DNA of 64,000 bases from Chlorokybus atmophyticus (GCA_009103225.1 RHPI01002368.1:401397-465396), one strand, 5' to 3'. Positions 6,987 through 48,200 are shown, counted from the stretch's first letter. The notes: generated from the letters alone by a model not told the origin. Translations and numbers: made by a program.

Positions 6987-9900
6987 TTACCTGCTTGCAT
7001 TGTCTCCGTCCGCCAGGCGCAAACAGCTGTCTACATGTACGCTCTCGAGTACCGCGATGTCCCACAGATGTATCAACAGCTGTACAAACACACTGCAGAT
7101 ACATGTAACCAGTCAGTTGCCACGCAAACACAACACGAGCGCATAGTGTTGGACACTATGTATGCACTTCACCAATGGCGTCATGTTACAGCGACAAGGC
7201 TGTGTTCTTGACGTTGAAGCACGGACATGTGACACGCACTGTAATGTCGCAATACCTGCGGAGTTCTGGTTGCTCTGCAAACTTGCTTGTGTGTCCCCGT
7301 GCAAACAGCTCGCACACTTTAGGCATGTCGCGATCGCCGTACACGCTGCGCGACAAAACCAGCATCGTCACTTACACCCCACCACAATAGTAATGCAATG
7401 GCCTCATGCGTGCCAAGCATACGTGTAAACAGCACTTACGGTTGCTTTCGGCGAAATGTGTTCCACATGCTCATGAAGTCCTTCTCATGTGCAGCGAGGT
7501 TCTTGAATGACTCCAACATCTGCACTCAAGAGCATCGGCTGAGTTCTCGTGCATGCACGGGTTTACACTTGCGCCAAAGAACAAGATTGCACCCACACGC
7601 ATACACTCAGATCGTGTATGTCTGTATGCACGTACGAGGCAGGCGTGTACAACCTGTCCCACAAAACATACATCACATACCCTGCGATCATCTGCTTCAG
7701 CCTGTTCCTCATCCAACTCATCATCGCTATCTCTATCAGACAGCACCTCCTCCAAAGTCATCAACTGTCACAAGCCAGCGTTTAAGCAGCACAGGAAATC
7801 TGCCGGAGAACAGCAAGACTTGCTGATTGACAATGACACTAACGCGTCACAGCCGCCTTCAGCATACCTGTGCCGTTCGCGAGTGGTAGAACCTCCTTGC
7901 AGAAAGTGCTTCCTTCCTGTCATGAAGAAGTTAAGCGCCCTCGCGCACGGCAGGAATGAAATGAATATGCACGCAACACCTTAATATATGCAGCAACATT
8001 CTATGCATACATACAAAATGACGCGAATACAGGTACATGTTTAGTATCGTATCTAGATATGAGTATAAGTGTACACATGTAAGTACAGACACACCGACAG
8101 AGACAGAGCAGGGTAGCAGCAATCCAGAGTGCATACGCTTGCGCTGACAGCAAGGTCGGTTGTTTGGCTGGCCGCTTCTCGACTTTAGCCTCCACCTTGA
8201 TTTCCTCAGCCTGCACCTGCTTAACTGTTGGTTGCGTACTCGACGGTTGACTCACTGCTGCCTGGTCATCAACTGGCGCCGTCAACGGCTTGACAATCAG
8301 CTTCTTAGAAGTAACTGCTGGAGTGGTCAACGGCGACTTTGACCTGTCCTTTGCATTGGACACATCCATCGACTTGGACATATCTATCGATATGGAAATG
8401 TCCATCGGCTTGGACACGTCCGTCGACATGGACACGTCCTTTGACTTGGACACCTCCATCGACTTGGACATGTTGATCGACTTCGACACATCCTTCGGCT
8501 TTGACACATCCACCGACTTGGACATGTTGATCGACTTGGACGCATCCTTTGACTTGGACGCATCCTTTGACTTTGACACATCCATCAATTTGGACGTGTT
8601 TATTGACTTAGACATGTCTTTCAACTTGGACATGTCCCGTGATTTCGAGTTAGACTTGGTGGCTTTGAGCTTGGAGATGGACTTGGAGGGTTCTTTAGAG
8701 ATGGACTTGGACTTGGACTTGATCGATTTGGAGGAGACTTTGTCTACCTTCTCTTCTGCGCTCGCCTCACAAGGTGGTGGCGCCTCCGACTGCACCTCTG
8801 CTTTGGGAGGAGAGGTGAGTTTGCCAGCTGTCAACTCGGGCGCTTCTGCTTCTGTGATCAACACATCTCTCTCCTCCAGGTTGTTGTTGTTGGGTTGAAC
8901 AGGTGCTGAGTTGGACGACGACGGGTGTGAAGCCAACTCGGTAACTTCTGATACGTCCGCGGGCCGGCTGCTGGCTTTCCCTCCCGCCGCGCTGGCCGAA
9001 CCACCTGATGATAGCAGAGACATGTTGCAGTTGCCCCAAAGCTCAGTCAAAAGCCGCAGCCACCCTGCCCACGTCTTTGGCCTGCTCATGAAGTAGAATG
9101 ACTTCGCGACAATCGTCCACTCGAAATCAAGCGGCTTCTCGCCAATGAATTGGCCTTCTGCATCATAAAGCTCTGGTCGAGGTTGAACTGTGATCTGCAA
9201 CAGCAATTTAGTCACATGCATAAGCTAATGTACGCGTGCTGCATTGCACCTCGTGTCTCTGACATAAGAAACAACCATAAATGCCAAGACATACTTGATG
9301 TGTACAATATGCCTGCATACGAACAAGCTAATGCACCTGTATTGCACCAACACACAGCAGCATGCGAGACTACAAACAGCACAGAAGCATACAAATAATC
9401 AGGAAGCCCATACCACAAGGCAAGACCTTGCCGCATCTGATCAACTTACTTGAGGTGTACGGTTGGAGCGCGCGTCAAAGGGTGCGGAATATTGAAACAA
9501 ATCGTGCGAAGCCAACACATGTAAAGACAACCCAATCACAGAACCGCACTTCAAGCAGCAGAACGGGCATTGGTAATGATACACAACTTCTATCCGTTTC
9601 CGGCCCCCGTCAAACATGTATGTGAACAGAAGCTCGCCAGAGTCCAGTACTTGCGTCTTTGAACTGACATCCCCACTCAACACGGGAGACGGTGAGGAGA
9701 TGTCGGCATGCACCTACAACCACAGCAAGGTTGTAATCAATATATGCCACAAGATGTCACAACAGAGAGACACTGACTCAAGTGAAAGGACCTACCATGC
9801 ACTAACATGGTTATGTTGATAGGCCATGCATGCCAGCTGTAGATGCAACCAGACAAAACAACACACTTCCGGGCCGGTTATAATACCAGGGGGAGAACTA

Positions 9901-19185: not shown

Positions 19186-22100
19186 ATGCCTGAAGTCAAG
19201 TCGGTGCTTACCAACCCCGAATATGGCAAAGGTGTGCACACAGAGCTTGACATAATGTCACATCATTATTATGCAGTGTACGATCAGAGTTCCATCAAGA
19301 TCTCATCTGTGATTGCATTGTGCGATGCAACGCAGCGATGGAGCTGCCCGCGCACCACAAAGGCTACAACGACAAGAAGTCTATGACTGGGAAGAACTTG
19401 CGGCCGAAGAAAGGTACCGCATGGGCAGTCCTATGCTGGTTGATTTGTCATAATGCAGTACTTAGTGTTGCGGCTGTAATTGTGAAGATGGCAATGGTGG
19501 AAAGGGCACTTGGGGCAACATACTAGACACATTTGGGGAGGCCTGGTCCGACCGCAACGACCCTAATTATGACTCTGACGAGGTGCGTTTCATGGGTTCA
19601 TTGTTCCACTTGCTGCCCCGTTGACTAATCGTGCTAGTAGTCTCTTGAGCGATGCAGATTGTGAATACTTGTTGGTCATAGTTTAGTCATTAACTGATAA
19701 TTTGGCTGATTAAGCCACTCACTGCTTGATTTGTTGATTTGGTCAATAGACTGCAACCTGGTGTTAAACTCATGAGCAGCTGCATTGTAACAACTTCCTA
19801 GCTTGCTTGATCAACAAAAACCAAACAAACAAGTTATACACTGAGCCAACACTCAATGATTGTGCATTGGGTTGGTAACCGAGTTTATGCATAGTTTGTG
19901 ATCCATGGAGAACTCAATTACAACATTGACTTCAAGGTCGCTCTCTTTTTTACTGTTTACTCAGTGAATATTTATGCTAATGACATACTGACTGATGAAG
20001 AATGTTATGCTTGTCAGGAGCCATACCGTTTGGTGGAGGCTCCGGTGGCGGACGGCGCGGTGGTTGCGAATGCAGTGGACCAGTTTAAGGAGCGGGCGAA
20101 GGCCGTCCTGGAGGAGTACTACGCCTCTGAGGACGTTAAGGAGGCCGCGGATGCCGTCAGAGACATGGGGGAGCCGCAATTCCACCACCACTTCGTAAAA
20201 AAGGTGAACTATGTATATTGTTTATCTCCATACGGCTTCTAGTCCTTGTTGCAGCGTAGTGATTCTGTTTCAAGGCTTTCAGCTTTTGCACATGCTTCAG
20301 TCAAGTGTTTGCAATGACGAGCCTTAGTGTTGGTTTTGAAACTCAAAGCGTGAAGTGACAGCTCAAAGCGCATCTGCGTGGCGTGATGGTGTGCTCACAC
20401 TTACTTAGGTCAATCCACTGCAACATTGCATGGTGGCATGATTAGTCTATGTGACAATAAGAACATTCAATTGCCCAAAGTAAGAATATGGGCTTGTATA
20501 AACCTGTCCAAAGAGCACTTATAAGTTGTGGTTCTGGTCTTGGCAAAATTCTTCAGATTGCTATTCCAGCTGTAGAAGTGTTTGACATGCTCTAGCAGCA
20601 AATCTGAGTGGCTGTTCTTCAAACTTGTCCGGCAGCAGTGAGCGGATGGGTAATAGTCAAAGCAACATGTGCATTTGGTCTTGACACCTTGTTCCTATTT
20701 GTTATCACTGCTTCCCAACACTCCATGTGTGTTCCCACAGGCTGTGACCATTGCATTGGACCGCAAAGACAGGGAGAAGGAGTTGGCTTGCACGCTGCTG
20801 TCTGCACTCTACGCCGATGTTATATCACCAGAGCAGGTGAGAAGCACTAACGCTTCAACACTCAAAAGGAGCACTACTGTAGCATCTGTGCGTGCGACCG
20901 TGCGTGCGCTTGTGTAGGCATGTGCATGTGTGCTTACATGTGTGCGTGTGCGTGCGTGTGCCTGCATGCGCGTGTCGGTACGCGTGTGTGCATGTGTGTT
21001 TGGTTGGTTGGTTGGTTGGACTGCCTGTCTGTGTGACTGATGGACTTGTTGTGTCGGTTGCCAACACAGATGGCGCGAGGCTGCACGAACCTCGTGGAGA
21101 GCGTGGAGGACCTGGTGCTGGACATCCCGGATGCGGCGGACCTGCTCTCGCTCTTCCTCGCACGCTCTGTTGTTGACGACATCCTTCCACCGGCTTACCT
21201 CACCAAGCTGGAGACAAAGCTCCCCGAAGACTCTCTCCCTCGACAGGTGAAGCACACTTCACATTTGTCAACACCACGTTGTACGTACCTAGTGTGCTAC
21301 ATGCACCCTTGCGTGGTTATTGCGTGAGAAAGTGCAACCAACGACTACTCAAACACTGCCTTCATATCAGCGTACTGCTAGTACACCGTACACTGTGTCG
21401 CTGTCGTTTAGTCAATGTGGATTGCACCGAGTGGCAATGGATCGTCCGCATGGATAATATGTCATGCTGCTTTCGTGATTGTGATGCTGGTGGTTTGAGA
21501 CATTGAGAACACTGTGTTACTTGTTGTTGCATCAGGTGGTGCATCGCGCTGAAGCGCACGTCAACGCGCGCCACGGCAGTGAGCGTGTGTTGCGCTGCTG
21601 GGGCGGCGGCGGGGTGAGTCTACTTGTTGTTTACCAAACAATGTTGACAGAGTTGTGCCACATTGTCCGGCGGTTAGTGGCATGCATTGTCTTAAGCATG
21701 CATGGCATTGTGTGTGACAGGTGAGCCATGTTGACGACGCCAAGCGCAAGGTAGCCGCTCTACTAGCAGAGTACAAGACGTCTGAAGACACCACTGAAGC
21801 CTGCCGCTGCATACACAACCTGCACGTGCCGTTCTTTCATCATGAGGTATGTTTTCCTCAGCACCTCAGTGGTTGCTAATGCAATAGCAGTATGTTGGCA
21901 CTACTCGCTGGTCTCGTGTCGACTGGTTGTCACTCCTTTGCACAAGCTGCCACAGTTACCTAGTGAACAAGCAGTTGTTTGATTACACTGTCAATGACAC
22001 ACGCGCATGCACACATACTGACGCACATGCATAATCACATAGGCACCGACCAGTGCACATGTGCGTGCACACATACTCTAACCCACTTGCACACACGCAC

Positions 22101-22431
22101 TCACGTACGCGCGCGCACGCACGCACACATATGCAGTGCACAAACTGGCAACCCATGGCCGCAGGTGGTCAAGAAGGCCGTGACCATGGCGATCGAGGAG
22201 CCCCCCGCGGAGCTGGCGATGCTGCGTCTGCTGTCGGAGTGCCGGGACAGCGGCCTGATCAGCTCCTCGCAGGCGCTGAAGGGTCTGCTGCGCGTAAAGG
22301 ACGGCCTCGACGATCTCGCCCTGGACGTCCCCAACGCCAAAGAGCGCTTCGCGTCCATTGTGGAGCACCTCAGCAGCAATGCCTCAGCTGCCACTGATGC
22401 TGCCAACGATGCAGAAGACACCAAGCAGTGA
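19186..22431 (+). CDS. MA3-domain translation regulator (PDCD4/MRF-like) with two MA3 domains
   Basis: RPKK|DGNGGKGTWGNILD..DRNDPNYDSDE|EPY; MA3-1 KAVLEEYYASEDVKEAA..HHHFVKK|AVTIALDR..LVLDIPDAADLLSLFLARSVVDDILPP; MA3-2 AKRKVAALLAEY..VPFFHHE|VVKKAV..LALDVPNAKERF; TGA at 22431. Confidence 0.92.
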
Positions 22432-26110: not shown

Positions 26111-27275
26111 GTTGGACAGTTGTCATCGTTATAGGGCGTGCGACATCCGCCAGTGCACCTTGTTGGAGTAGTGGTTGCGCACTAGCAGCTGCTAGCAGTT
26201 GATGATAGTGTATTTGTTGATGTAGTTGTTGACCTACACATGACCTTGTGCTTGACAGCTGTGTTGTGCGTTTTGTGCCCAGACGATTCTGAGTACATAT
26301 CAGTGTGCGCGTGTGTGTGTCAACGTAGCCGTTGTTGTGTTGGTTACGGCGAAACTTTGTGCTTATTTCGTGCAATGTACTTTGTTGGTGTGCGTGCATC
26401 TATGCCAATGCAATATTAAACAGTGTGTTACCACTATCAGACGTTATGCTACCGGCCTTGAAGTTGCCGACAGTCGCTCACTCTCTAGCTGTCCACCCTA
26501 CTCACATAGACAGACACCACCAAAGCAACCGCATGCATATGGCACCACAAACACCATGGTCTGCAAAAACCATGACACAACAAACACAAGCAACAGTGCC
26601 CACCCAACCAGCACAGATGACATACATTGAGCAGCTGCGAGGACCGCATCAGTCGCAGTCACGCATGCACACTGAATGTTGGGCACATGCACAGTTGCTC
26701 TTTTCAGAAACTTTCTAACTGAGGCGCTGCTTGCTCAGGTGAGGAGCTGCTGCTTGCTGCTTCTCTCCTGCCTTGAGCGTGCAGCTGTGGGGCCCAGCGC
26801 ACTGCTATCTTGCTTGTCTGATTCTGGCACTAACTTGTGCCACACCTCCTCCCTAGCCCGTTTGCTTGGTTGCTTATGTGTGTGTTATTGTGTAGCGCTT
26901 GCTGTAGCTGCTAGCTGCTATTGTACTGGCAGTCTTGCCATTGTCATTGCATATGCACACGTGTTTACAAGCGCGCACGCACACAAATACACACGTACAG
27001 CAGGGAAGGTAAGGCTGCATGGGCAAAAAAATCAATCTTCGTTACAAATGTTTTTGGTCCATATGTAATGCTCCGACAGCCAAACCACTTTTGGTTGCTG
27101 ACACTCCTATCACAGTCAGCCACAATCGCATTATATGAATTCCACTCTCGTCGCTTGATCTTCGTGCATCTTATGTTCAAAAACCCAACATGTTGTACAA
27201 CTCAAGCAAATGTATGGAGGTGTCAGTGGAGAAGATTGCATTTGTTCTGTTGAACAAAGGCTCTGTCTTCTCTCA

Positions 27276-30200
27276 TTACAAGTTCTGTAGATACCATGCC
27301 ACAGGGATGGCGCCTTGATCCAGCCCAAGAATCTGCCACAATGTCTGCACAAGCACACAATGGGTTACCTCATGGCAATAACCAATGGCAATGAATCCAA
27401 GGACAGGTGTCGATGACAATGGTTTTGCCCAGATACACACCTGCAACTGCACTTTGCCAATAGAGGTTGTGGGGGCAGCAATGCCGACGGAAGCGAAAGG
27501 CTCTTCAAACTCCTCATCCTGCAAGCAATCTCACAGTAAGCGCATGTAACTCTGCAATACGTCCATGCCTGTGCGTGCGTGCGCCTGAGTGCGTGAGCGT
27601 TCATGTGTATTGCCGTCACCTCTGGGATATGCTCCTCGAACTGGTTGAACACCAGCACGCCTTCATCATGCATCTTTCTCAACCTGCAACAACCATGACC
27701 AGATAAATCAGTAAGCAGTCATACAGTACACTAATTGATTTCCATAGAACAACTGAATGAAGTAACTGTGCAGATAAGAGCAGCATCTATGGGATAAAAG
27801 CAATCACTGACCATCCACTTTCAAAAGTTGACTGACCAAATAAATTACTCACCTTGCCACGCTTGCAGGGCTGCCATGCTGCAGGGCCTCCCGCTGGGTT
27901 GATGCGTACAGCATGGCGCCCACGAGGTGCGTGCGCGGCTCGGGAGTGGGCTTAATCACCGGACGCATGTCGAGCGCGATCATGAATGCTGCCTTGAGGA
28001 TGTCGACGGACCACACGCGCTGGATCCAGTCCCTGTTGACAGGATATCAATGTTGAGACGGATGTATACACGGACAGGGATGTAGTAGTAGAGTAGATGT
28101 GGACATGCACACTTACAAACATATACACAGAGACGCCCGCACATGCACATGCACATGCACATACACGCACACGCACACGCGCAGAGCACATATGCACACA
28201 CGTGCACGCGCGTGTGCATTCACATGCACACAGATGCGTGCGAACAACAGCTGACCTGATATAGAATCCGCCCATGCGAGCGTTGATCTCGAGTAGTTTG
28301 GGTCCAAAAGCCGTGAGCTTGAACTCAACATTGAACACGCCATTCTTTAGGCCGATGCCTGTGCAGCATTGCAGCGCCGCAGCCACCAACGCACCCTGCA
28401 AAGAGCGCAACAGTAAGCTTGGATCACAACCGTTTCTTACATCATTAGTTGTGTTGGGTCATTCGGGTAATGGAGCTGTGCATACTTGTTTGTCACGGTG
28501 GAGACGTGAGGGCATCGCGGCAGCAGTCTCGCAGAAAAGAGGCAAGCGGGTGGGACCGTTGTCGGTCACAAACGCCGCAAGTATCTGCACAAAGATCAAA
28601 GTCAGTACATATCACACCTCTCTATACGTCATCCATAGCACTATAGGAGAAATGTACATTTTTAATGTAATTGACTCGTATAGGGAGACACACAAAACTG
28701 CACAAAGAAGCCTAGGTACACATCCATACACAGACAGTCAATCACTTGTCTCCATACCTGACCATCGTAGACGATAATGTCAACGTCGTGTTCAGATCCC
28801 TCGACGTACTCCATGAGTACCAGTGACGATCCAAACCCGAGGCCAATGCCGCCATGGTCCTCCTCGGACGAAAGGTGAGACCTGATCTGCCGGTACTTGG
28901 CCATGCACTCCTCAGAATCCTTCACCAACACCACGCCGGCAGCGGAAGAACCATACTCCAACTTGAGCACCGCCGGCAAACTCAACTGGATACACGAAAC
29001 AACAATGAGACCTTATGAGCAAACATTACATACACCTGTCCTTCCATATATGGTCTTGTCTTTGTCATGCGTGCCAAATACAGATGGGTTGGCTGTATCA
29101 ACTGTGGTGGCCTTCTTGCGACTATGTGCTCTTGTACACACCATGATGCTTATCAATGTGTGCATGCGTGTGTGTATGGGTGCACGCAAGTGTTTACTCG
29201 TACATGCGTGTCACACGGTCACGTGTTACCTCATGGAGAGCGCTGCGGACATCATCTTCAGAGCACAGCCTGAACGACTTTGCTGAAAAGAGTGCCGTGA
29301 TAGGTTTATGCGGCCACGACGTCTTCTGTTTCATCAGCGTATCTTGAGTCCTGAACTTGCTCTTGGCGATGCACGTGGCCCCGTATGGGTTGCCGCGTGT
29401 CTTCAACAACTCTTGCAAGCGTGCTGCGAGGGGTCCACAATCTTCCCAGAAGGTGAGACAACCCTCAGGCTGGATCCCTTGCTGCTTCATGAGCTCGATG
29501 ATCTTCGTGGCGTTGGCCTCGTCACGCGTGTGGTCGTTCATCTCAGGAACGCAGATGAACTTGTGAACCACAACAGCAGCGTAGTGGTTGGGGTCCGCGT
29601 CCACAAGAACCACGCGAAGACCGAACTGATCCCGCGCAGACGTGAACACAAACCTCTTCGAGTATCCGCCGCTGAGAAAGAAAGGTCACAGTCAGTGATG
29701 CCAGTTTGCAGAATCACTACCAGTACCAGTACCCAGTGGCAGAGTTGTTGATCATATTACCAGTTAGCAGCCACAGCAACAGTAAAGCCAAGTGCCAGAA
29801 GCAAGTACAGGGATCACAAGCTGTGAACATTGATGCAATGTCACACGCAATAACAACAACGTGTTGACTTATTACACGCTTTGGAGCGTGCTTACCCGCC
29901 TACGACGAGGACGGTGCGGCCGCGCATAAGATAGTTCTCTCCTCTTGCAATCATTGTTGCAACCCATGGTCGGACCGAGTCACCTGAAGTCTCCGGTAGT
30001 ATAAATTCAAGCGTCTGCGCCTGCAGGGAGCAGTCGTGGTCGTTGACTTCTATCACGGCGGGGATGATGATCTTGTCGTTGGCGGTGAGGATGAAGTCGA
30101 GGCCGATGAGGTCCGTCTGGGCGCCGACGCCACCGCGCTGGGCGTCGTTGAGCTCGTCGCGCTCGTGGTCAAGGAGGGCACGCATCACGCTACCCGCCTC

Positions 30201-33200
30201 ATCCGCAACAGTCTGCAATGATGATGATGATGTGTTTGTGTGCGTGCGTGTTGCAGGCACCAATAGCATGGGCCCAATGTACAGCAAGCCACTATGCACT
30301 CACCTGTAACACACGTCGCTTGAAGTCGATGTCTTCAATGCCCCATTGATCCAACACTGCGTCCAGAGACATCGGGATGGTGTTGTCGCCGTTGATGGGG
30401 CTGTGGTTTGGACCCACGCCGCACAACATCTTCGTCACAACCGGCTCGCCCCACATCGAACGCACCACCATCACACGCAAACGGAAACCCAGCGACACGG
30501 AGGGGGGAGGCGCTCTACCAACAAGACGACAACGAGAATGAGATCGTATCATATTACTGCTGTTATAGAGATGTAAGCTATAAAGACCATGAAGTAAGAC
30601 ATGTACGGTATTCACCAGTTCACGCTAACACCAGACTCAAGTCACGAGAGTCACATCCAAGCATGCTGTTGTGCACACAACGAATCATTGTCTTATTGTG
30701 TACATACCGCGAGTTAGCACGCATATCCACAGGGAAGTCCGACTCCTCCTCTCCCACCTCGAGCGCAAGCGACGTGAGAATCTTGCTCGCAGCGTCTTCT
30801 TCTGCAGTTGAAACAGAGTGGTTGATGGCGGCGTGTAGGCCGACCTCGCGCGCGGGCATGACGAGATGTGAAGACATAGTTGGTAAGAACTCCTCGACAA
30901 GGATGGCGTCGCCCTCCCAAAGCTTGACGAGGAGAGACTCGACGGCGCCCACGGCGCCAGAGATGTCCTCACGCTTCCAGAATGACACGCCGTTGCTGCC
31001 CATCCACATTGGACCGGAAGGCTTCACCACGATCTGCTGAGAGTGGATGCGCTTGGTCAAACGCTTCAGGGCTGCCTCAAATAATGGCCTGCGTGGGGCG
31101 CGTGTGTAAGTGTTTATCACATCGCAGAAGTTGGAACATGCCATGCGTTGCAGGAGCACCCAACAAGCACAACCACACAGTGAATCAATGCCATTCCTTG
31201 ACGACACACAGTATAGTCCACCGCTTGACGCATGCATGGACAGCTGTACGCATCAATGCATAAACTCTCCGTCGTTCACTTCATCAACCATCATGCCAGC
31301 AGACTATCTCACTACCTCACCAGTCATATGGTAGTCTACTGATAGCATATATAGTCCTCTGATACGCATATGCACGCACGCATGCACGCACGCGCGCGCG
31401 TCAGCACTTGGACGCACAAGCAGGTGCAAGCACGCACGCACGCACATGCACCATTACACGTATGTGCAGGCGCATGACTGCAGGTACCTACTCATGAGCT
31501 CATACACGAAGGTAATGTGCACATACCTATGGCCATCAGCTTCTGCGAGGTGGTGCACCCATACGCCTGACGTGCCCGTGGCGTTGTAGCGTTCGCGCCA
31601 GGCGCACTTGTACGTGAAGGCGACACATGTGGGGTGGGCGACGCGTGCACGGGAGAGGAGCAGACGGGTGTGCAGCTTGTCGTTGGTCACGTGCTCCAGT
31701 GATGAGCTGCTCGACATGGGCGTGTTGATGCCCTCCTCCAACCACACGCCGTCGCTTCTCTCGCCCTCTGTGGCTGGCGCCGTCAAGAAGTTGGCAAAGT
31801 ATGTCACACGCCTGAAATGTAAGAGGCACACATCAACACACCACAACATAAAGCCGTTTTTGTGCCTTCAGGTTTTTTGTCTCAAAGACTCTACATTCTG
31901 ATAGGCAACTTAACCGCTCTGTATGCCACCCACTATGTGACCGCGGTATACCGAGTGCATGTGTAATGGAGACCTCAAGAGAACATGCTGTGCTCAACAT
32001 ATCACATCAAGTACTTGCCTTGGAGGTTCAAACTCTTCAAGGTAGCACTGCCCTGAGGCATCAAACCAGATGCCCTTCTTGACATAGAGTGCATGTGTGG
32101 CCTCCCCTTGCACCAGTGAAGGATCCTGCATTCACGCGTATCCACATTCACACACACGCACACATGCACACCCAACCACCCAACAGTGTACACATCAGTA
32201 TAGAAGTCTACTACTCACAAGTGGGGCTTTGTGCAGCCAGGCAGGGTTGGGCACGACAAGTACGTTGCCGGGAGACTGTCGGCCTCCCTCGAGCGCGAGA
32301 CTCATGCGATAGTCTGGTTCAGAGAGCAACACGACACATGTTGTGTTGGGCGCGACGTGTCGCGGGGGCTTGATGGCGCCATGGGTGTCGCCCGTGCCAT
32401 CGCCGGCGGTGAGGTCGATGAGAGGGCGCAGGCCCACATCGAACAACACGTTGCGCAGGTTGGTGAGGGAGATGGCCTCGCGCTCGCTTGGGGTGGGCTC
32501 CTTCACGGGAGGGGTGTCGGGGGGCAAAGGCAACCTGCAATGCAAGCATGTGGCTCTTGAGGACATTGCTCATGTGGAGGCTACTGTGTGATCATAAGGT
32601 AGTGTACGCAGGATTGTGATGAGTACCTTTGGACCCCATACCTGACCAGCCAATTGCACACACATGCGCACGGGCGTGCATGTACACGCACACACATACA
32701 AATGTATGTGTGTTGCCTACAATTACCTGAATGAGAGCTTGCGTGCTATGGGTGAGGGTTGCTCCGAGGGCCCGAACGCAGCCCCGTCGTGTGCCCCAAA
32801 GTCCGCCAACACCACGGCTAAGGCTGCCGCCACGCGCTGGGAGTAACCCGGCTCGGTGTTGGGTTTGAAGCGGTGGGTGAAGGCGGAGGCCAGTATGTTG
32901 GCCATCACGAACTCCGAGTTGGCAAAGTGGCGCTGCAACGCGCCCGTGCAGTAGATCACGGCACCGTCGCCCATCAGACACACACTGTGGCCAAACACCC
33001 CCTGCGAAGCTCTCTCCACACTGCAATCCACAACACACACCAAACACATTTCACGTTAATGACACGTGAAACGTTGTGCACTAAGTCGTTTGTAAGTAAT
33101 GCATACGGAACATGCCCGACGCACGTGCGCATGCAAATGTGCGTGTGTGCGCACGCTTGTGTATGCAAATGTGCACGCTAGCATACGCACAGGCAGGCAC

Positions 33201-35768
33201 ATGCAAGGTTCACATTAGCAATAACACACCTTTCCGCGAGCCAGTGTGGGGGCGGGTCGTTGGCCCACCCGCCCACAATGTCTTGCGGCTCGAACCTCAC
33301 GGCGCAGTTGTAGGGCGGGTCGGATTCGAGGGCTTCTGCAAAGGCAGCGCACCCTGATGCTGCGTTGATTGTGGGGGGCAGGCGCAGGTTCAGGCGCAGC
33401 GCCGTGTCGGCCACAGATGGACCCTGCAAATGGAGAGATAGCGTGTCAGCCATAGGAGGTGTGTCATCAGCTCAACATGTACCAGCACGACACTTACTGC
33501 TTTACACCTGTGCAAAGGTTAAGGTTTTGGTGGACAATGAGCACTAGTTCAGATATGAACTAGGCACAGACCGTGACTGTATCATCTGAAGTTTCAGCAA
33601 TTGCTTTGCATGTAAGGTATGCGCACATGTTTGTGAATATGCGTGCACGCACATGCACATGTACACGACAGAACATTGATGAGACCCTACTCACTTGGAT
33701 TGCGCCTGTGACGGAGAGTGTGGGTCGCCATGTGTTGTTGAGAACCAGTTCAGACAAGTCATGGTCAGCGACGGTGGTGTCATCCGGGTTCACGAAGGGG
33801 AAGCGGGCCCAGACGGCCTCCCCGAGGACCGACACCGTGGCCGAGACCTGGTTGATGGCGTCGTCGGGAATGTCGCAGTACAGCTCCTTGAGCGTCAACC
33901 TACCCGTCTGCTCCGACTCGATCCGGGAGAGTATAGCGCGAGCCACACGGAAGGAGTCGGGGACTATGCCTCCCACCTCTCCACTATGAGCTGCCTCCTC
34001 CATCACCTAAGCAAAAAGTAAACCACATTTTAGCCTGTCATGCCAAACCGGTGCAACCTCACTTGTTAATCAAGGTTCAGGTAACTGACTATGTACCTGG
34101 ACTGTAAGTATGCCGGCAATCAAACCGCGCATGCTGGATGTCAAGCAGAAGCGCTCGCTATCAGCTGGGCCACTGTGAAGAAAAAGAAGCATAGTTCAAG
34201 TTGTTGCATTGTGTTATTTGCATTGCTACATGCATGGCGATAAGCTTTAAGGGCTTACTTGTTGAGTGCAAAGACTGCTGCGGGGTCGCCAATGCGCTCC
34301 GTGAGGTAGTCCAGGCACTCTGTTGGACAATTTTAAACTTCTGAGAATCTTACCCCAGCATGTTGCGTGGTGCATGATGTGTCTTACATAAGAGGGGGTA
34401 CTTACTCTGATCGGGTGTGAAGTTGGGTGTGTCAGCGCAGTCAATGCACAGAAGAATCTCCCCGTGAGGCTTCCCGCTCGCCTTCAACGACACCACTGCG
34501 CAGTTGCAGGATCAGGACATGCGCAGACAAGGATATGCACTCACACATGTACATACATGCACAAGCACACGCACACCCAACCACATGCGTGCGTGCGTTT
34601 TGAGCATCCTACTTGTGGTGAGGAAGGTGAGGAGGCAGGCGCGCTCAAACTGACTCCACTCGGGAGTCTCAGCAGCCTTCTTCCCGTTCTCCATGGCGTG
34701 GCTGGTCCCGTTCATGCCGACTGTATCCACAACCTGGCGCGAGTACTGAGGCGTGTACATGAGGCTCGCTTTGCCATCCTCCGCAGTGGCGGGGAAGTCC
34801 ACTATCAAGAGAACTGTCTTGCCTGGCTTCACCACCTGTGAACACTTGCTTATGTACTGGTGTCACGAGCCAAAGAAACTGGATACCACTAACAATATGA
34901 CAACAACATCACACCTCCACTTTTATGGTGTTGGCATGTTTCGGCAGCTGCTTGTTGATCCATTGCTGCAAGGCATCACCAAAGGCCTTTACACCAGCCT
35001 GCATGCAACGCACCACAAACATACAGTGTGAGTCAATGCCCAGGTAACAGCACGATTCATAGGCACAATGAACTTTGATGATGATGATGAAGTTGGGTCG
35101 CAGAAGCCATGCAACTGTGTTGTTGATGCACACGCACTACTGTCCAAAGCACCAACTGTATATGACATTGAAGCTACGACCATTACAAGCTACAACCACT
35201 TCAGGGCTGAGTCTCATTGTATGCATGTACACATGTGTGTGTGCGCGCATGCGTGTGTGTGAGTGCACGTGCATGCGTGTATGTAACAAGTCCACTGCAG
35301 TCTCACCTGTGTGGTGGTGGTGGTGGGTNNNNNNNNNNNNNNNNNNNNNNNNNNNNNNNNNNNNNNNNNNNNNNNNNNNNNNNNNNNNNNNNNNNNNNNN
35401 NNNNNNNNNNNNNNNNNNNNNNNNNNNNNNNNNNNNNNNNNNNNNNNNNNNNNNNNNNNNNNNNNNNNNNNNNNNNNNNNNNNNNNNNNNNNNNNNNNNN
35501 NNNNNNNNNNNNNNNNNNNNNNNNNNNNNNNNNNNNNNNNNNNNNNNNNNNNNNNNNNNNNNNNNNNNNNNNNNNNNNNGGGGGGGGGGGTGAAAAATAC
35601 GTGTGTGCGTGTAAGTGTGCACATGTGTGTGGGGATTCCAAGTCCTCGACTGCATTTGAGTCTCACCTCACTGGTGGTGTTGAATTTTGACAGCAGGCCT
35701 TCGGAGTTAAGTGCATTCCATGCACGTGACGCCGCAGCACTCACAGCCTCCATCTCAATGCGGACCAT
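27276..35768 (-). CDS. CARNS1: Fusion protein: N-terminal degenerate M20 dipeptidase-fold domain + carnosine synthase 1-like double ATP-grasp ligase
   Basis: C-terminal ATP-grasp: TVLVVGG|GYSK.., GCLTFWEDC, PAVLKLEYGSSAAGV, LMEYVEGSEHDVD, ILAAFVTDNGPTRLPLFCETAAAMP, CCTGIGLKNGVFNVEFKLTAFGPKLLEINARMGGFYIRDW (CARNS1 motifs). N-terminal M20-like: ERIGDPAAVFALN|GPADSERFCLTSSMRG..AHSGEVGGIVPDSFRVARAILSRIE..NTWRPTLSVTGA..LRLPPT..SDPPYNCAV. Joined in frame by intron 32535-32726. The 5' exons near the N gap are uncertain. Confidence 0.85.
35329..35579. other. Assembly gap (N run) in an intron near the 5' end of the M20-CARNS1 gene
   Basis: Continuous Ns. Confidence 0.99.
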
Positions 35769-36969
35769 ATCTCTCTCTGTCTCTCAAACTGGTTCTAATT
35801 TCCGATCGATGCTAGTTTAGGTTGGCGATCTGGTTCAGGCACTGACACTGTGGGAAGGCAGGGCAAAGGGGTGAGAAAGAGTGACGGTACTGGACACTGT
35901 CCACAGTGGTTTGCTTTGTGTTTGCAGCATGTGTGTCGTGTGGATTGTCTTGTAAGTAACGTAAGCGTCATCGATTCGTTGTTACAGCATTACCAATGCC
36001 TCTGATCGCTGATCCAAGCTGGACTCAAAGCATGCTAGCATGCAACCACACTGAGGGAGTGCTGATCTGACTGTCCACCAGCTTGTGCAACACTCAAACA
36101 CACCGCTGGTACTTGTTTACTTTGCCAGATCGCTCACCTCAAAGCACAAGCAGCCTTTGATAAAACTGCAAATCCCACAACAAATGAAGTAATTAAGCAA
36201 GCACATGGGCACACTATCACCTTGGGGAGGGGGGAGGAAAGCTGTTGGGGCAGCAGTAGTGGCGTTGTGCTCAACTGTCAGGCGGCCCGCAGCGATCCAT
36301 CAACTACAATGTGACCCTGAAATCTCACCACAACGCATGCACGCAGCCCAACCCCTGGCCTCACGACAGCGCTCCCCCGGTCTGGTCTGGTCTGGTCTGG
36401 TCCTGGCCTGGTTGTTTAGCCTGTGTTCGTTAGCTACGGAAATAAACTTTGTTTGCAATACATACAACTCCAAATGAACGGAATATGTACACGGTTAAGT
36501 TTCCAGTTGATCGCCGTGTTTCCGCGTACGGAGGTAACCTTTCTTCCTTACAGACCGCCAAAGCCGTTGGATGCCAACCACAAGCATAATGGCACCGTTC
36601 GATTGCCCGCGTCGATCTAGGTCCAACACATGCGAAGAAAGTCTGGCACGCGGCGGTTATTCTTCTGTGCGGCTTGTGCCCTCTTGTGCGCAAGTAGCCT
36701 CAATAGCGATATTCTACCAAGAAGCATACAGCAAGCTTGCACTGGATGCATGATCAATAAGCAGACCTTCATCTCAATGTCGATTCAGTCACTGCCACGT
36801 CAGTGAATCAATCGTCAGAGATGAACAGTAAGATTCGGATTAGGGTTTACACTGGAAATGGTATAGGGACCTGCCAGCAAGCAGGCGGCAGCGGCGGCCG
36901 AGGAGGAGGAGGAGGTAGAGGAGGAGGTAGAGGAGGCGGAGAGTGAGGAGGTTTGGAGGTGGAGTGGCT

Positions 36970-45272: not shown

Positions 45273-48200
45273 ATGGCGATGATGACGTGGCAAATGCGGC
45301 GTAATAGGAGGAGACCGCCGCCGCTTGTGGTAGTGGCGGCGTTGGCCGTGGTGGTGGGGCTGCTGATGGCGCTGCCACGTGGCTGCCAAGCAGGTACTCT
45401 ACGCACAACAGCAACACTCATATACAAAATAACGACAAAAAACTGGACACAAAGACAACATGAGACGTATATCACACATCACGGTTGACAACAAAATATC
45501 GCATTGCTTCTGTTTCATGGTTGGATGTAATATAGTAAGTACACGCAATTGTTTTGAAGCTACTCGTATTCTCATTCTGTGTTGTTTATTGCCATGCACG
45601 TATGTGGTGTATGAAAAGCACATCACATTGTAAGTTATGAGTAGTGGCAGGCAAATCAGTACCTTGCTGCTGACACTACTGTGACTGAATGTAGATTTCA
45701 CTGTAGTAGAATACGATGGGTACACGATTGGAATGTTATGTTGGCATTGTGAACGTGTGTGTATCAACTTGGCGCGCACGCACACACACACACAATAGCA
45801 AGCACACAAGGCCGCATGCGCGGACCTGTACACGTACATTCCCTCCTCCCCCCACCCCACCCCCCACCCCACCCCCCACACACAATGCAATCTCAACTAC
45901 ACTGCGTACACACACCACCACCACCACACACCCCGTTCGCACTCACCACCACATGCATCTCTACAACAGACTCAGCGTTCGGAGCTGCCGAGACCACAGC
46001 CGACCCCGAAGACGAGAGCATGTTTGCTTACTGGGGTGAGCGAATTGTCGTTGCTGTTGTTGGTGTTGAAGCACGTGTGTCACGCAATGGTTCATGAATG
46101 GCTCATGGAGTCCAACATGTCGCGTGTGTTGTGGTTGTTGCGTAGACAGCAGCTTCTACGGCTACATACCACTGAATGCCATCGATGATGAGACTCCCCC
46201 TCCCCCTCCTCCACCACCTCCACCTGCTCCTCCTCCCCCTCAACCACCTCCACCACCACCACCACCACCTCCTCCTTCCCCTTCTCCTCCTTACCCTTCC
46301 CCTCCTCCTCCTCCTTCCCCTTCTCCTCCTCCACCGCCTTCTCCTCCTCCTCCCTCTCCTCCGCCACCAGAAGAGATAGATACAGATGCTCCACCATCTT
46401 CACCTTCACCTCCTCCACCTCCCCCGCCACCTCCACCTTCTCCCCCAGCCCATCCTCCTTCACCTTCTCCCCCTCCCCCTTCCCCACCTCCTCCTCCTCC
46501 TTCACCATCAGCCCCTCCCCCTCCTCCTTCTCCCCCTCCTTCACCACTTCCACCTCCCCCTCCACACTCACCACCTCCTTTACCACCTCCTTCACCTCCT
46601 CCTTTACCATCTCCTTCACCACCTCCTCCATCTCCTCCATCCCACTCACCTCCACCACACCAACAAACACCACCCCCTCCTCCACCCCCTCCTCCACCAC
46701 CACCACCACCACCTCATCCACCACCTCCTCCTCCTCCCCCAGACCTCAATCCTCTACCAGAAGCAAGTCCCCCTCCTCCCCCTCCTCCCCCTCCGTCACC
46801 ACCATCACCACCACCATCACCATCTCCTCCTCCTTCTTCTCCTCCCCCACCCGTGATCCCCGCCGGTCTCGCTCTTGTGTCCGGCGGTCTGGCGCTCCAG
46901 GGGGACGCCGACGCGCTGCTGCCGTTCGATGAGGGAAGGAGGGACGCAGTCAGGGGGGCCATGGCGAGCGTCGCGAATACAACGTGAGGCGTGCGTGCGT
47001 GCGTGCGTGGGTGCATGCGTGGATGTGGGTGTGGGTGTGGGTGCGGGTGTGGGTATGGGTATGGGTATGGGCCTTATATACAGATAGTACTTACGTGTGC
47101 ATGCATGCACGTGTGTGTATCTGCGCGTGCACGTGTATCTGTTGTAAGTTTGTATCTTTCCCAACAGGATCGACCACGTTGCCCTCACCGGCATTCAAGT
47201 CTCCCAAACCGACGTTCCCGAACCCGCTCCAGGTCCCTCTCCAGGTCTCTCTCTCACACCTGCTTCGGGACCTTCATATTGGGACCCATCCCCAGGTCTT
47301 GTACCCAGTCTGGGACCTACCTTGGGTCCCGAACCCGGTCTGGCCCCCACTCCGGGACCCTTTAGCTGGGTCCCAGCTTCTGGTCCCGGTTCCTCCCCGG
47401 GTCCAGGGCTGGGTCCAGTCCCCACTCCTGGGCCGGGTTCAGGACCTTCACGTAGGAGGTTGTTGTCGAGCACCGCGACGGTGTCGTTCACGTATGCGAT
47501 ATCGGTGCTGCAGGCGGCCGCGGGGTCGACGGCGCTGAGGGTGGCGGGGGCGGCGGGGGGGGGACTCGCACAGGCACTCGCGGACGCTGGTACTACCACG
47601 CACCGAGTGTGTGTATCTGTGTATTCGTGCATGCGTGCGTGCGTGCGTGCGTGTGTGTATGCATGTGGTTGCAGTTGTGCGTGCGCATGTGTGTATGTGT
47701 TGTGCAAACAACTCCACACATGTGCCTGTGTGGAGTTGTTTGCATATGTGCGTGTGCGTGTCCGCGTGTACACATACGAACGTGCGCGTGTGACCTATGT
47801 TGTGTACACACACACAAACACACACACAACCACGCTTGATTCCTTTTTCCTTGACCAGGCCTACCAGTGCAGCCTATAATGACAACCTCCGTCCGCGTCA
47901 TCCCTTCCTCCCTCTCTTTCCCTCCTCCTCCTCCCTCTCCTCCCTCCCCTCACCCCCCTTCCTCCCCCCCTCCCCCTCTCCCAACATGGCCTCCTCCTCC
48001 CCCTCCAACCCAACTCCAGGCAGGAGCCAACACCAAACCCAACACTTCAAACAATAGCAAAGTGGCCGTGGGCGTGGCGGTCCCGTTGGGGATAGTGAGT
48101 GTGTTGGCGGCTGTATCGGTGCTGTTGTATCGGAGGAGGAAGAAAAGGAGGCAAAGCGCGGGACAGATGGAGTTTGCTACTTGGGGTGTGCATAACCCGG

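What the first reader, a model, noticed from the sequence alone, without database searches (positions are those of the whole stretch)
32727..35768. Catalytically dead M20 dipeptidase domain fused in frame to a carnosine-synthase-type ligase
Seen: the M20-like exons end ..ARKLSF-AG|gt (32727) and intron 32535-32726 (GT-AG, phase 2) joins them without a stop to G-LPLPPD.., which leads into the CARNS1-like ATP-grasp domains. The structural motifs of M20A dipeptidases are recognisable (HSG..GGIVP.SFR..LSRIE, WRPTLSVTG, LRLPP, DPPY). The active-site positions appear replaced: GHLDKQP reads YTPQYSRQ, GADD is absent, the catalytic/metal EE reads IDCADTP, GEGGSIP reads GDGAVIY and SNAHGPNE reads THRFKPNTE. 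Established: the M20A family includes the carnosinases CNDP1/2 and yeast Dug1p, and CARNS1 makes beta-Ala-His. Inference: a dipeptide hydrolase fold has become a pseudoenzyme attached to the ligase that makes that class of dipeptide. It could act as a product sensor for feedback, a dimerisation module or a substrate channel. I know of no description of this architecture.
Basis: partly seen in the sequence, partly recalled or inferred. Interest (0 to 1): 0.88.

Follow-up and report, generated by a model that had tools for sequence, protein, structure and literature searches.

The report
Dead dipeptidase fused to carnosine-synthase-like ligase
In the streptophyte alga Chlorokybus, one expressed 1450-residue protein joins a peptide-cutting enzyme fold that has lost its metal site to an apparently intact carnosine-synthase-type peptide-making enzyme; I found this combination in no other organism and in no paper I could search.

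Summary
On the minus strand, nine GT-AG exons (35768-32727) encode a 478-residue M20A-type domain. It matches a profile of bacterial lpg0809/3pfe-like peptidases at 252 bits, and its AlphaFold model matches 3pfe at TM 0.77, then carnosinases CN2/CNDP1 and Dug1p.

Four of the five metal ligands and the catalytic glutamate are replaced; only the C-terminal His remains. The lid (dimerisation) domain keeps 29 of 35 family-conserved positions, against 24 of 84 in the catalytic domain.

RNA contigs from two studies show the 192-nt junction intron (32535-32726) spliced out, joining the domain in frame to a CARNS1-like ATP-grasp ligase that keeps 44 of 46 family-invariant positions. One 4.9-kb contig carries the whole 23-exon, 1450-codon frame. 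The assembly gap lies inside intron 1, and no gap sequence is in the mRNA.

The window is Chlorokybus atmophyticus. The JGI gene model (1422 aa) already contains the fusion, but Pfam recognises only the ATP-grasp part. No other fused protein was found, and the closest CARNS relatives are unfused.

A diverged Chlorokybus sample shows nine differences here, all synonymous, and the same splice.

The likely role is non-catalytic (dimerisation or ligand binding); this is inferred, not shown.

The parts
36223..36459 (-). Upstream 5'UTR exon. The upper end is approximate (237 loose letters in the X1 contig).
   Evidence: Loose ends of the X1 and X2 contigs at 35849 match the window exactly from 36223.
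35848..36222 (-). Intron within the 5'UTR (GT..AG).
   Evidence: An in-frame TGA lies 15 nt upstream of the ATG (sequence).
35667..35768 (-). Coding exon 1 (ATG at 35768-35766; residues 1-34), N-terminus of the M20-like domain.
   Evidence: joint 34998|35667; identical in P0153.
35329..35579 (.). Assembly gap (N), wholly inside intron 1 (34999-35666). The sequence just below the gap weakly repeats the exon 1 end and intron start.
   Evidence: gap; the mRNA skips 668 nt across it; flank similarity.
34915..34998 (-). Exon 2 (residues 35-62).
34613..34835 (-). Exon 3 (residues 63-137). It holds the degenerate HxD motif (Q92, S94) and the lost bridging-Asp loop.
   Evidence: pLDDT is below 50 at residues 96-111.
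34406..34495 (-). Exon 4 (residues 137-167). The EE motif is replaced by D158-T159.
34259..34319 (-). Exon 5 (residues 167-187). Ligand Asp is replaced by N186.
34097..34172 (-). Exon 6 (residues 187-212).
33695..34006 (-). Exon 7 (residues 213-316): the conserved lid/dimerisation domain, with H219 in the HSG motif and the TWRP motif.
   Evidence: phmmer against 3pfe residues 219-317, E 4e-28; 29 of 35 conserved columns kept across the lid.
33230..33423 (-). Exon 8 (residues 317-381): end of the lid (R330 in LRLPP) and the return to the catalytic domain. An 8-residue lid loop is deleted.
   Evidence: 3pfe residues 334-391, E 2e-5.
32727..33020 (-). Exon 9 (residues 381-479): degenerate GGSIP and NAHGPNE motifs, H430 retained, then the Pro/Ser-rich linker.
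   Evidence: Nine differences, all synonymous, in the diverged X4 contig.
32535..32726 (-). Junction intron (192 nt, GT..AG, phase 2). If unspliced it reads ..SFR-TAA, and it contains an ATG at about 32565 in frame with the ligase.
   Evidence: Spliced out in X1 and X2, and no contig covers it (depth bins fit exon-only cover).
27276..32534 (-). Exons 10-23: linker plus the complete CARNS1-like protein with its C-terminal ATP-grasp domain (residues 479-1450; stop TAA at 27278-27276). The intron at 31812-32018 is GC-AG.
   Evidence: 44 of 46 family-invariant columns kept. PF13535 hit. End-to-end alignment with unfused homologs. Exons below 30304 rest on homology and on P0153, not on reads laid here.

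Best explanation
This is one real, expressed gene of Chlorokybus encoding a 1450-residue protein. Its N-terminal 460-478 residues are a pseudoenzyme derived from a bacterial-type M20A metallopeptidase (the lpg0809/3pfe family, whose next solved relatives are the carnosinases and Dug1p). The di-metal centre and the general base are gone, and the active-site loops have diverged. The lid (dimerisation) domain, with its His (CNDP2 H228 equivalent) and Arg (R343 equivalent), is kept almost intact. A proline-rich linker of about 35 residues joins this domain to a full-length, apparently active CARNS1-type ATP-grasp ligase. Shown here: the fold, the ligand losses, the splice, the single reading frame, the intact ligase motifs, and synonymous-only divergence over 71 codons. 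Inferred: the domain no longer hydrolyses peptides and is kept for a non-catalytic role. The role I favour is lid-mediated homodimerisation that fixes the quaternary arrangement of the attached ligase. Binding of an amino-acid or dipeptide carboxylate by the retained lid Arg/His is a possible second role. The gene probably arose when an upstream M20 gene and a downstream CARNS-like gene merged, with the roughly 160-nt spacer becoming the junction intron. A TAA directly after the donor and an in-frame ATG inside the intron may be the former stop and start; this is speculative.
For: Homology and fold: profile of 64 bacterial homologs, 252 bits, E 5e-79, over residues 42-457. AF2 model pLDDT 85, pTM 0.85. 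Foldseek top hits are 3pfe (E 5e-37, TM 0.77), then CN2, Dug1p and CNDP1.
Loss of catalysis: H99->Q, D132 lost, E166->D, E167->T, D195->N, with only H445 kept. Low-pLDDT segments coincide with active-site loops. Pfam PF01546 no longer detects the domain.
Lid kept: 29 of 35 conserved columns, against 12 of 56 and 12 of 28 in the two catalytic halves. The bacterial homologs are equally conserved in all three parts, 57-63%. H219 and R330 are invariant columns.
Fusion: splice joints in X1 and X2, and a 4925-nt contig spanning the whole ORF. The 1450-codon frame has no stop. The independent JGI model P0153 is 98% identical.
Ligase intact: 44 of 46 invariant columns.
Selection: all 9 listed differences in a 95%-identical contig are synonymous, and that contig is also spliced to exon 10.
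Unfused relatives begin about 17 residues after the junction.
Against: No biochemical data exist. Dimerisation is inferred only from conservation of the lid and from what lids do in other M20 enzymes. Asp158, Asn186, His430 and Gln92 could in principle still hold one metal ion. The selection test covers only 71 codons in one contig of a sample whose species I cannot name. Contigs do not report rare isoforms, so a minor ligase-only or M20-only transcript is not excluded. Exons below 30304 were not checked with reads here. The substrates of the algal ligase are unknown.
Confidence: 0.45

Rival explanations
1. Ligand sensor: the dead dipeptidase fold still binds the ligase's dipeptide product or one of its amino-acid substrates through the retained lid Arg/His and pocket. 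It passes this on to the ligase as feedback or activation.
For: The lid residues that in CNDP2 contact the substrate (H228, R343) are kept as H219 and R330. The nearest characterised relatives are Xaa-His and Cys-Gly dipeptidases, which is chemistry related to a CARNS-type product. The domain is under purifying selection.
Against: The metal ions that hold the scissile carbonyl and the substrate amino group are gone. The GGSIP substrate loop is changed, and an 8-residue lid loop (the CNDP2 T330 region) is deleted, so the pocket is heavily remodelled. No binding data exist, and the ligase's product in this alga is unknown.
Confidence: 0.25
2. Neutral relic: a lineage-specific gene fusion whose peptidase half is simply decaying and does nothing beyond being tolerated.
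For: The fusion was seen in only one genus. The catalytic half diverged strongly (22-26% identity). Pfam no longer recognises it.
Against: Nine exons remain open with canonical splice sites. The lid keeps 29 of 35 conserved positions despite about 34% overall identity to the nearest homologs. The model folds confidently. All 9 differences in the diverged sample are synonymous, and they lie in the degenerate catalytic half.
Confidence: 0.15
3. Still a hydrolase: a bifunctional synthetase/hydrolase like trypanothione or glutathionylspermidine synthetase-amidase, using a non-canonical (mononuclear or metal-free) site to trim or recycle the ligase's product.
For: A precedent exists for ATP-grasp synthetases fused to an amidase that hydrolyses their own product (PMC2427367, abstract). 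H430, D158 and N186 remain as possible ligands.
Against: Neither canonical metal site keeps more than one ligand, the bridging Asp is lost, and the base Glu is shortened to Asp. The active-site loops are low-confidence and diverged.
Confidence: 0.08
4. Two genes or an artefact: a separate M20 gene ending at TAA 32726-32724 and a ligase gene starting at ATG ~32565, joined only by a mistaken model or by the assembly gap.
For: If unspliced, the reading frame stops right after the donor, and an in-frame ATG lies in the intron. Unfused homologs have N-termini of matching length.
Against: Spliced junction reads occur in two runs of two studies and in a diverged sample. No contig covers the intron, and one contig spans both halves. 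The gap is intronic.
Confidence: 0.03

Closest known systems
Bacterial M20A peptidases of the lpg0809 / PDB 3pfe type (NCBIfam PRK07907 subfamily; deposited as 'succinyl-diaminopimelate desuccinylase', function untested)
   Same: Nearest sequence and structure relatives: same length and domain order, about 34% identity overall and up to 54% in the lid, Foldseek TM 0.77.
   Different: They are stand-alone bacterial enzymes with all ligands intact and no ATP-grasp neighbour within 2.5 kb in 80 loci. The algal copy is intron-containing, fused, and lacks the metal centre.
Carnosinases CNDP1/CNDP2 and yeast Dug1p (M20A dipeptidases)
   Same: Same fold and lid architecture. The lid His and Arg (CNDP2 H228, R343) are conserved in the algal domain.
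   Different: Only 12-14% identity in the structural alignment. These are active di-metal enzymes and are not fused to a ligase. The algal domain is not their ortholog.
CARNS1 / ATPGD1 carnosine synthase family (vertebrates, molluscs, Klebsormidium 'carnosine synthase')
   Same: Residues 496-1450 align end to end at 36-48% identity. 44 of 46 invariant columns are kept, and the C-terminal motif and ATP-grasp domain are present.
   Different: None of the homologs I retrieved at full length (about 90, plus the longer hits) is 800-1300 aa with an N-terminal M20 domain. The substrates of the algal enzyme are unknown.
Trypanothione synthetase-amidase and glutathionylspermidine synthetase/amidase
   Same: An ATP-grasp-type synthetase joined in one chain to a hydrolase fold that acts on the same kind of amide bond (PMC2427367).
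   Different: There the hydrolase is a CHAP cysteine amidase and is active. Here it is an M20 metallopeptidase fold with its catalytic centre destroyed.
S. aureus hmrA (M20D peptidase) - ldmS (ATP-grasp L-amino acid ligase) operon
   Same: A genomic pairing of an M20 peptidase with an ATP-grasp dipeptide ligase (PMC9486568).
   Different: Two separate, active proteins of other subfamilies in a bacterium; not a fusion and not a pseudoenzyme.
Pseudopeptidases in general; yeast Dug2p (WD40 + M20 domain) as an M20 domain inside a larger protein
   Same: A peptidase fold used inside a multidomain protein. The Atlas search lists Dug2-type WD40+M20 clusters.
   Different: The pseudopeptidase review I searched (PMC11266112) has no M20 example in its main text. 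What the Dug2p M20 domain does is my recollection only, because the paper was not available.

Membership tests
Peptidase family M20, subfamily A (Pfam PF01546 + PF07687) | Two-domain fold: an alpha/beta catalytic domain with an inserted lid/dimerisation domain | tested here: met
   AF2 model pLDDT 85. Foldseek: 3pfe E 5e-37, TM 0.77; CN2, Dug1p and CNDP1 E 1e-19 to 1e-22.
Peptidase family M20, subfamily A (Pfam PF01546 + PF07687) | Significant sequence similarity to family members | tested here: met
   Custom profile of 64 homologs: 252 bits, E 5e-79. phmmer on the lid exon against 3pfe: E 4e-28. The curated Pfam models themselves give no hit at E<=1.
Peptidase family M20, subfamily A (Pfam PF01546 + PF07687) | Five metal ligands (CNDP2 H99, D132, E167, D195, H445) | tested here: not met
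   Q92 (or P91), lost, T159, N186, H430: only one of five kept.
Peptidase family M20, subfamily A (Pfam PF01546 + PF07687) | General-base glutamate (CNDP2 E166) | tested here: not met
   Asp158 at that column.
Peptidase family M20, subfamily A (Pfam PF01546 + PF07687) | Lid residues that complete the partner's active site (CNDP2 H228, R343) | tested here: met
   H219 and R330 are invariant columns of alignment A1. The neighbouring T330-region loop is deleted.
Peptidase family M20, subfamily A (Pfam PF01546 + PF07687) | Peptide or amide hydrolase activity | not testable with these tools
   Needs an enzyme assay and metal analysis.
CARNS1 / ATPGD1-type ATP-grasp ligase | End-to-end homology with CARNS1 proteins, including the N-terminal non-grasp half | tested here: met
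   BLASTP 36-48% identity over about 900-970 residues to vertebrate, mollusc and algal members; tblastn.
CARNS1 / ATPGD1-type ATP-grasp ligase | ATP-grasp domain with the family-invariant residues | tested here: met
   PF13535, 31.7 bits against a cut-off of 27. 44 of 46 columns conserved at >=95% in 36 homologs are kept.
CARNS1 / ATPGD1-type ATP-grasp ligase | Synthesis of beta-alanyl-histidine (carnosine) | not testable with these tools
Bifunctional synthetase-hydrolase (trypanothione synthetase-amidase type) | Both halves catalytically competent | tested here: not met
   The hydrolase half lacks its metal centre.

The most novel reading that the evidence does not exclude
A bacterial-type dipeptidase gene came to lie beside a CARNS-like gene in the Chlorokybus lineage, fused to it, and was converted into a metal-free ligand-binding or dimerising regulator of the dipeptide ligase. 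This would be the first described M20 pseudopeptidase, and a case where a hydrolase of a metabolite class became the sensor of the enzyme that makes that class. The former stop and start codons may still be visible in the junction intron.
Probability: 0.2. Interest if true: 0.7.

Novelty: new variant of a known kind. Interest (0 to 1): 0.55.

Why it matters
Pseudoenzyme domains attached to active enzymes are a known way of building regulation or scaffolding. However, I found no M20-family pseudopeptidase in the review I searched, and no M20-CARNS architecture anywhere else in about 5.8 billion protein clusters. The gene is a clean natural experiment. The same fold is known as an active dipeptidase, the partner is a dipeptide ligase, and unfused relatives of both halves exist for comparison. 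It could show how a hydrolase fold is re-used once catalysis is lost. It could also give a handle on the still poorly understood structure, oligomerisation and regulation of carnosine synthases, and on what CARNS-like enzymes make in algae. Its reach is limited, because it has been seen in only one genus and its function is untested.

Tried and rejected
- Pfam on single exons and on the whole domain finds no M20 match. A custom profile was needed.
- phmmer of the catalytic-half exons against PDB found nothing.
- The representative search with a ligase exon found 140 relatives, none with an N-terminal extension of about 480 residues. Two long Elusimicrobia proteins carry MFS or other domains, not M20.
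- The look-up of sequencing runs was busy three times before answering.
- No ATP-grasp gene lies within 2.5 kb of 80 bacterial M20 homologs, and there is no second M20 copy in the window.
- The Atlas search gave only ordinary M20 clusters.
- Neighbouring ORFs gave no related metabolism, only an MA3-domain exon near 22 kb.
- Literature searches for the fusion, for carnosine in Chlorokybus, and for M20 pseudoenzymes found nothing relevant. The Dug2p paper was not held.
- The two-gene reading was considered seriously, because of the TAA after the donor and the in-frame ATG in the intron. It was rejected on the RNA evidence.
- I could not fold or search my own spliced model directly, so I used the nearly identical database protein P0153 for residues 1-478, which are identical to my model.
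- A second X1 contig that leaves the locus at 32404 remains unexplained.


Full report
**Where and what.** The feature lies on the minus strand. Reading 36000-32300 and translating all minus-strand frames gave nine exons: 35768-35667, 34998-34915, 34835-34613, 34495-34406, 34319-34259, 34172-34097, 34006-33695, 33423-33230 and 33020-32727. All have AG/GT borders and compatible phases, and together they encode 478 residues. The last exon ends in phase 2 at 32727. A 192-nt GT..AG intron (32726-32535) leads into an exon that opens the CARNS1-like reading frame.

**The assembly gap (tested first, as asked).** The N run at 35329-35579 lies between exon 1 and exon 2. Contigs of RNA-derived runs laid on 30100-35950 show a joint that skips 668 nt, from 35667 to 34998. 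The mRNA therefore joins exon 1 directly to exon 2, both in phase 0. Model residue 214 aligns with residue 219 of the 472-residue homolog 3pfe, so no coding exon is missing. The sequence just below the gap weakly repeats the exon 1 end and intron start. That fits a redundant scaffold join. It does not affect the protein.

**Is the fusion real?** If the intron stayed in, the frame would stop at once (..SFR-TAA). An in-frame ATG near 32565 could then start a separate ligase whose N-terminus would be as long as those of unfused homologs. I therefore treated the two-gene reading as open. The RNA evidence closes it:
- Run X1 (study P1, 2021) has one 4925-nt contig that carries the ligase exons, the spliced junction, all M20 exons and a 5'UTR.
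- Run X2 (study P2, 2013) has a 976-nt contig across the junction, with 252 nt on the ligase side.
- Depth in the bins around the intron equals exon-only cover.
- All other predicted introns appear as joints, including one GC-AG intron (31812-32018).
- The 5' loose end of both runs maps to 36223 onward. This defines a 5'UTR intron, and an in-frame TGA lies 15 nt before the ATG.

With the remaining exons placed by homology, the gene has 23 exons, 4353 coding nt and 1450 codons without a stop.

**Organism and existing annotation.** A search with the closest unfused relative returned P0153, named jgi/Chlat1/375/Chrsp10S00051 in EukProt. It is 1422 aa and 98% identical to my model over its whole length. 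The window is therefore Chlorokybus atmophyticus, an early-branching streptophyte alga. The fusion is already in the JGI gene model, but only ATP-grasp_4 is recorded for it. P0153 differs from my model by two short omissions (see 'noticed in passing').

**The N-terminal domain.**
- Sequence homology. The lid exon alone matches PDB 3pfe (Legionella lpg0809, titled 'M20A metallo peptidase') at E 4e-28, and the next exon matches at E 2e-5. The exons of the catalytic half match nothing on their own. I fetched 80 bacterial loci with this family and built a profile from 64 full-length ORFs. It aligns residues 42-457 at 252 bits, E 5e-79.
- Family identity. These bacterial proteins carry Peptidase_M20 and M20_dimer. 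After 3pfe, their nearest solved relatives are CNDP2, CNDP1 and Dug1p.
- Structure. An AlphaFold model of residues 1-478 (pLDDT 85, pTM 0.85) is poorly defined only at 96-111, 427-435 and the linker. Foldseek ranks 3pfe first (E 5e-37, TM 0.77), then mouse CN2, Dug1p, human CN2 and CNDP1.

**Loss of the catalytic centre.** The phmmer alignment of a bacterial member to human CNDP2 reproduces the known ligand numbering (H99, D132, E166/E167, D195, H445). Carried through the profile alignments, the algal residues are:

| CNDP2 position | Role | Algal residue |
|---|---|---|
| H99 | metal ligand | Q92 (P91 in the MAFFT version) |
| D132 | bridging metal ligand | no Asp in a diverged, gapped loop |
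| E166 | general base | D158 |
| E167 | metal ligand | T159 |
| D195 | metal ligand | N186 |
| H445 | metal ligand | H430 (retained) |

The GGSIP loop reads GAVIY, NAHGPNE reads FTHRFKP, and an 8-residue lid loop is deleted.

**An uneven pattern of divergence.** I counted how many columns conserved at 90% or more in 58 homologs the alga keeps:

| Region | Conserved columns kept | Mean identity to homologs | Identity among homologs |
|---|---|---|---|
| N-terminal catalytic part | 12 of 56 | 22% | 57-63% |
| Lid | 29 of 35 | 44% (max 54%) | 57-63% |
| C-terminal catalytic part | 12 of 28 | 26% | 57-63% |

The homologs are equally conserved in all three parts, so the difference is specific to the alga. 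The lid His and Arg, equivalent to CNDP2 H228 and R343, are retained as H219 and R330. The catalytic machinery was let go, while the lid, which forms the dimer interface in M20 enzymes (established knowledge of the family), was kept.

**Selection.** Run X4 has the same organism code but a different sample of the 2021 study. It holds a contig 95% identical over 32725-32937. Its ten loose letters are the start of exon 10, so that copy is spliced the same way. All nine listed differences fall on third codon positions and are synonymous. They lie in the degenerate C-terminal catalytic part, which argues against free decay. The taxonomy lists five Chlorokybus species, and I suspect X4 is one of the cryptic ones, but I cannot verify that.

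**The ligase half.** Residues 496-1450 align end to end with unfused CARNS1-type proteins. Identity is 46-48% to three unnamed transcript or metagenome proteins, 40% to Klebsormidium 'carnosine synthase', and 36-38% to vertebrate CARNS1. The alga keeps 44 of 46 columns conserved in at least 95% of 36 homologs. The homologs' N-termini map about 17 residues after the junction, and one of them sits on a 2951-nt transcript contig with only 56 nt of leader. The algal protein is thus a complete M20 protein, a proline/serine-rich linker and a complete CARNS-like protein.

**How widespread is it?**
- An exhaustive HMMER search of 1.84 billion representatives with a ligase exon found 140 relatives, none with an M20-sized N-terminal extension.
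- Among proteins of 782-2488 aa, only P0153 matches the M20 part.
- Stand-alone relatives of the domain are bacterial M20 hydrolases at 28-40% identity. The best one sits in a bacterial operon.
- In 80 bacterial loci, no ATP-grasp gene lies within 2.5 kb.
- I found no paper on this architecture.

These searches have limits. Word-index candidates were capped at 8000, and there is no eukaryotic genome collection to scan. Absence elsewhere is therefore likely but not proven.

**Mechanism.** Shown here: an expressed single polypeptide, a well-folded M20A-like domain without its metal centre, a conserved lid, and an intact ligase. Inferred: the domain is not a hydrolase, and it is kept for what the lid does.
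- I favour homodimerisation or scaffolding of the ligase (0.45).
- Second is ligand sensing through the retained Arg/His pocket (0.25).
- A neutral relic (0.15) is weakened by the open frame, the lid conservation and the synonymous-only differences.
- A non-canonical hydrolase, by analogy with trypanothione synthetase-amidase (PMC2427367), is unlikely (0.08).
- Two separate genes is essentially refuted (0.03).

The TAA right after the donor and the in-frame ATG in the intron suggest that the junction intron is the former intergenic spacer. This is a hypothesis.

**Verdict.** It is a new variant of a known kind (a pseudoenzyme domain fused to an active enzyme). It is so far confined to Chlorokybus, it is present but unrecognised in the existing annotation, and its function is untested.

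Noticed in passing
window 32019-32033 and 28256-28324 (minus strand), compared with P0153: The JGI model P0153 omits five residues (FEPPR, model residues 615-619). RNA shows an exon ending at a GC donor there (GC-AG intron 31812-32018). P0153 also omits 23 residues of the ATP-grasp domain (model 1299-1321), which include family-invariant E1310, N1312 and R1314. The published gene model seems slightly wrong at both places.
   Followed up: partly
window 35848-36459: The mRNA has a spliced leader of about 316 nt (5'UTR intron 35848-36222) with three upstream ATGs opening short ORFs of 12, 9 and 17 codons.
   Followed up: partly
window 35250-35328 versus 35600-35685: The sequence just below the assembly gap weakly repeats the exon 1 end and the start of intron 1 (..CACCACCA..GGTGAGAC..GCAGT..GGACTTG..). 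This may be a redundant scaffold join or a small local duplication.
   Followed up: partly
window 32404 (run X1): A second X1 contig (95-99% identical) follows the locus from higher coordinates down to 32404, inside exon 10. It then continues for 255 letters that occur nowhere in the window. It could be a paralog, an allele or an assembly chimera.
   Followed up: partly
window 32725-32937 (run X4): A 95%-identical copy differs only at synonymous sites and has the same exon 9-exon 10 splice. It is probably from a cryptic sister species filed under the same organism name.
   Followed up: partly
window 46001-48000: A 2-kb stretch has unusual composition (GC 0.61, GC skew -0.31, AT skew -0.23) and many overlapping long ORFs on both strands.
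   Followed up: no
window 21979-22428 (+): An ORF matches the MA3 domain (PF02847, E 7e-14). This is a neighbouring gene on the other strand, of the eIF4G/PDCD4 type.
   Followed up: no
introns throughout 27000-36000: Introns of this gene are rich in imperfect TG/CA-type motifs (GTGTGCGTGCACATGC-like). This made the junction intron look like the other introns even before RNA evidence was available.
   Followed up: no
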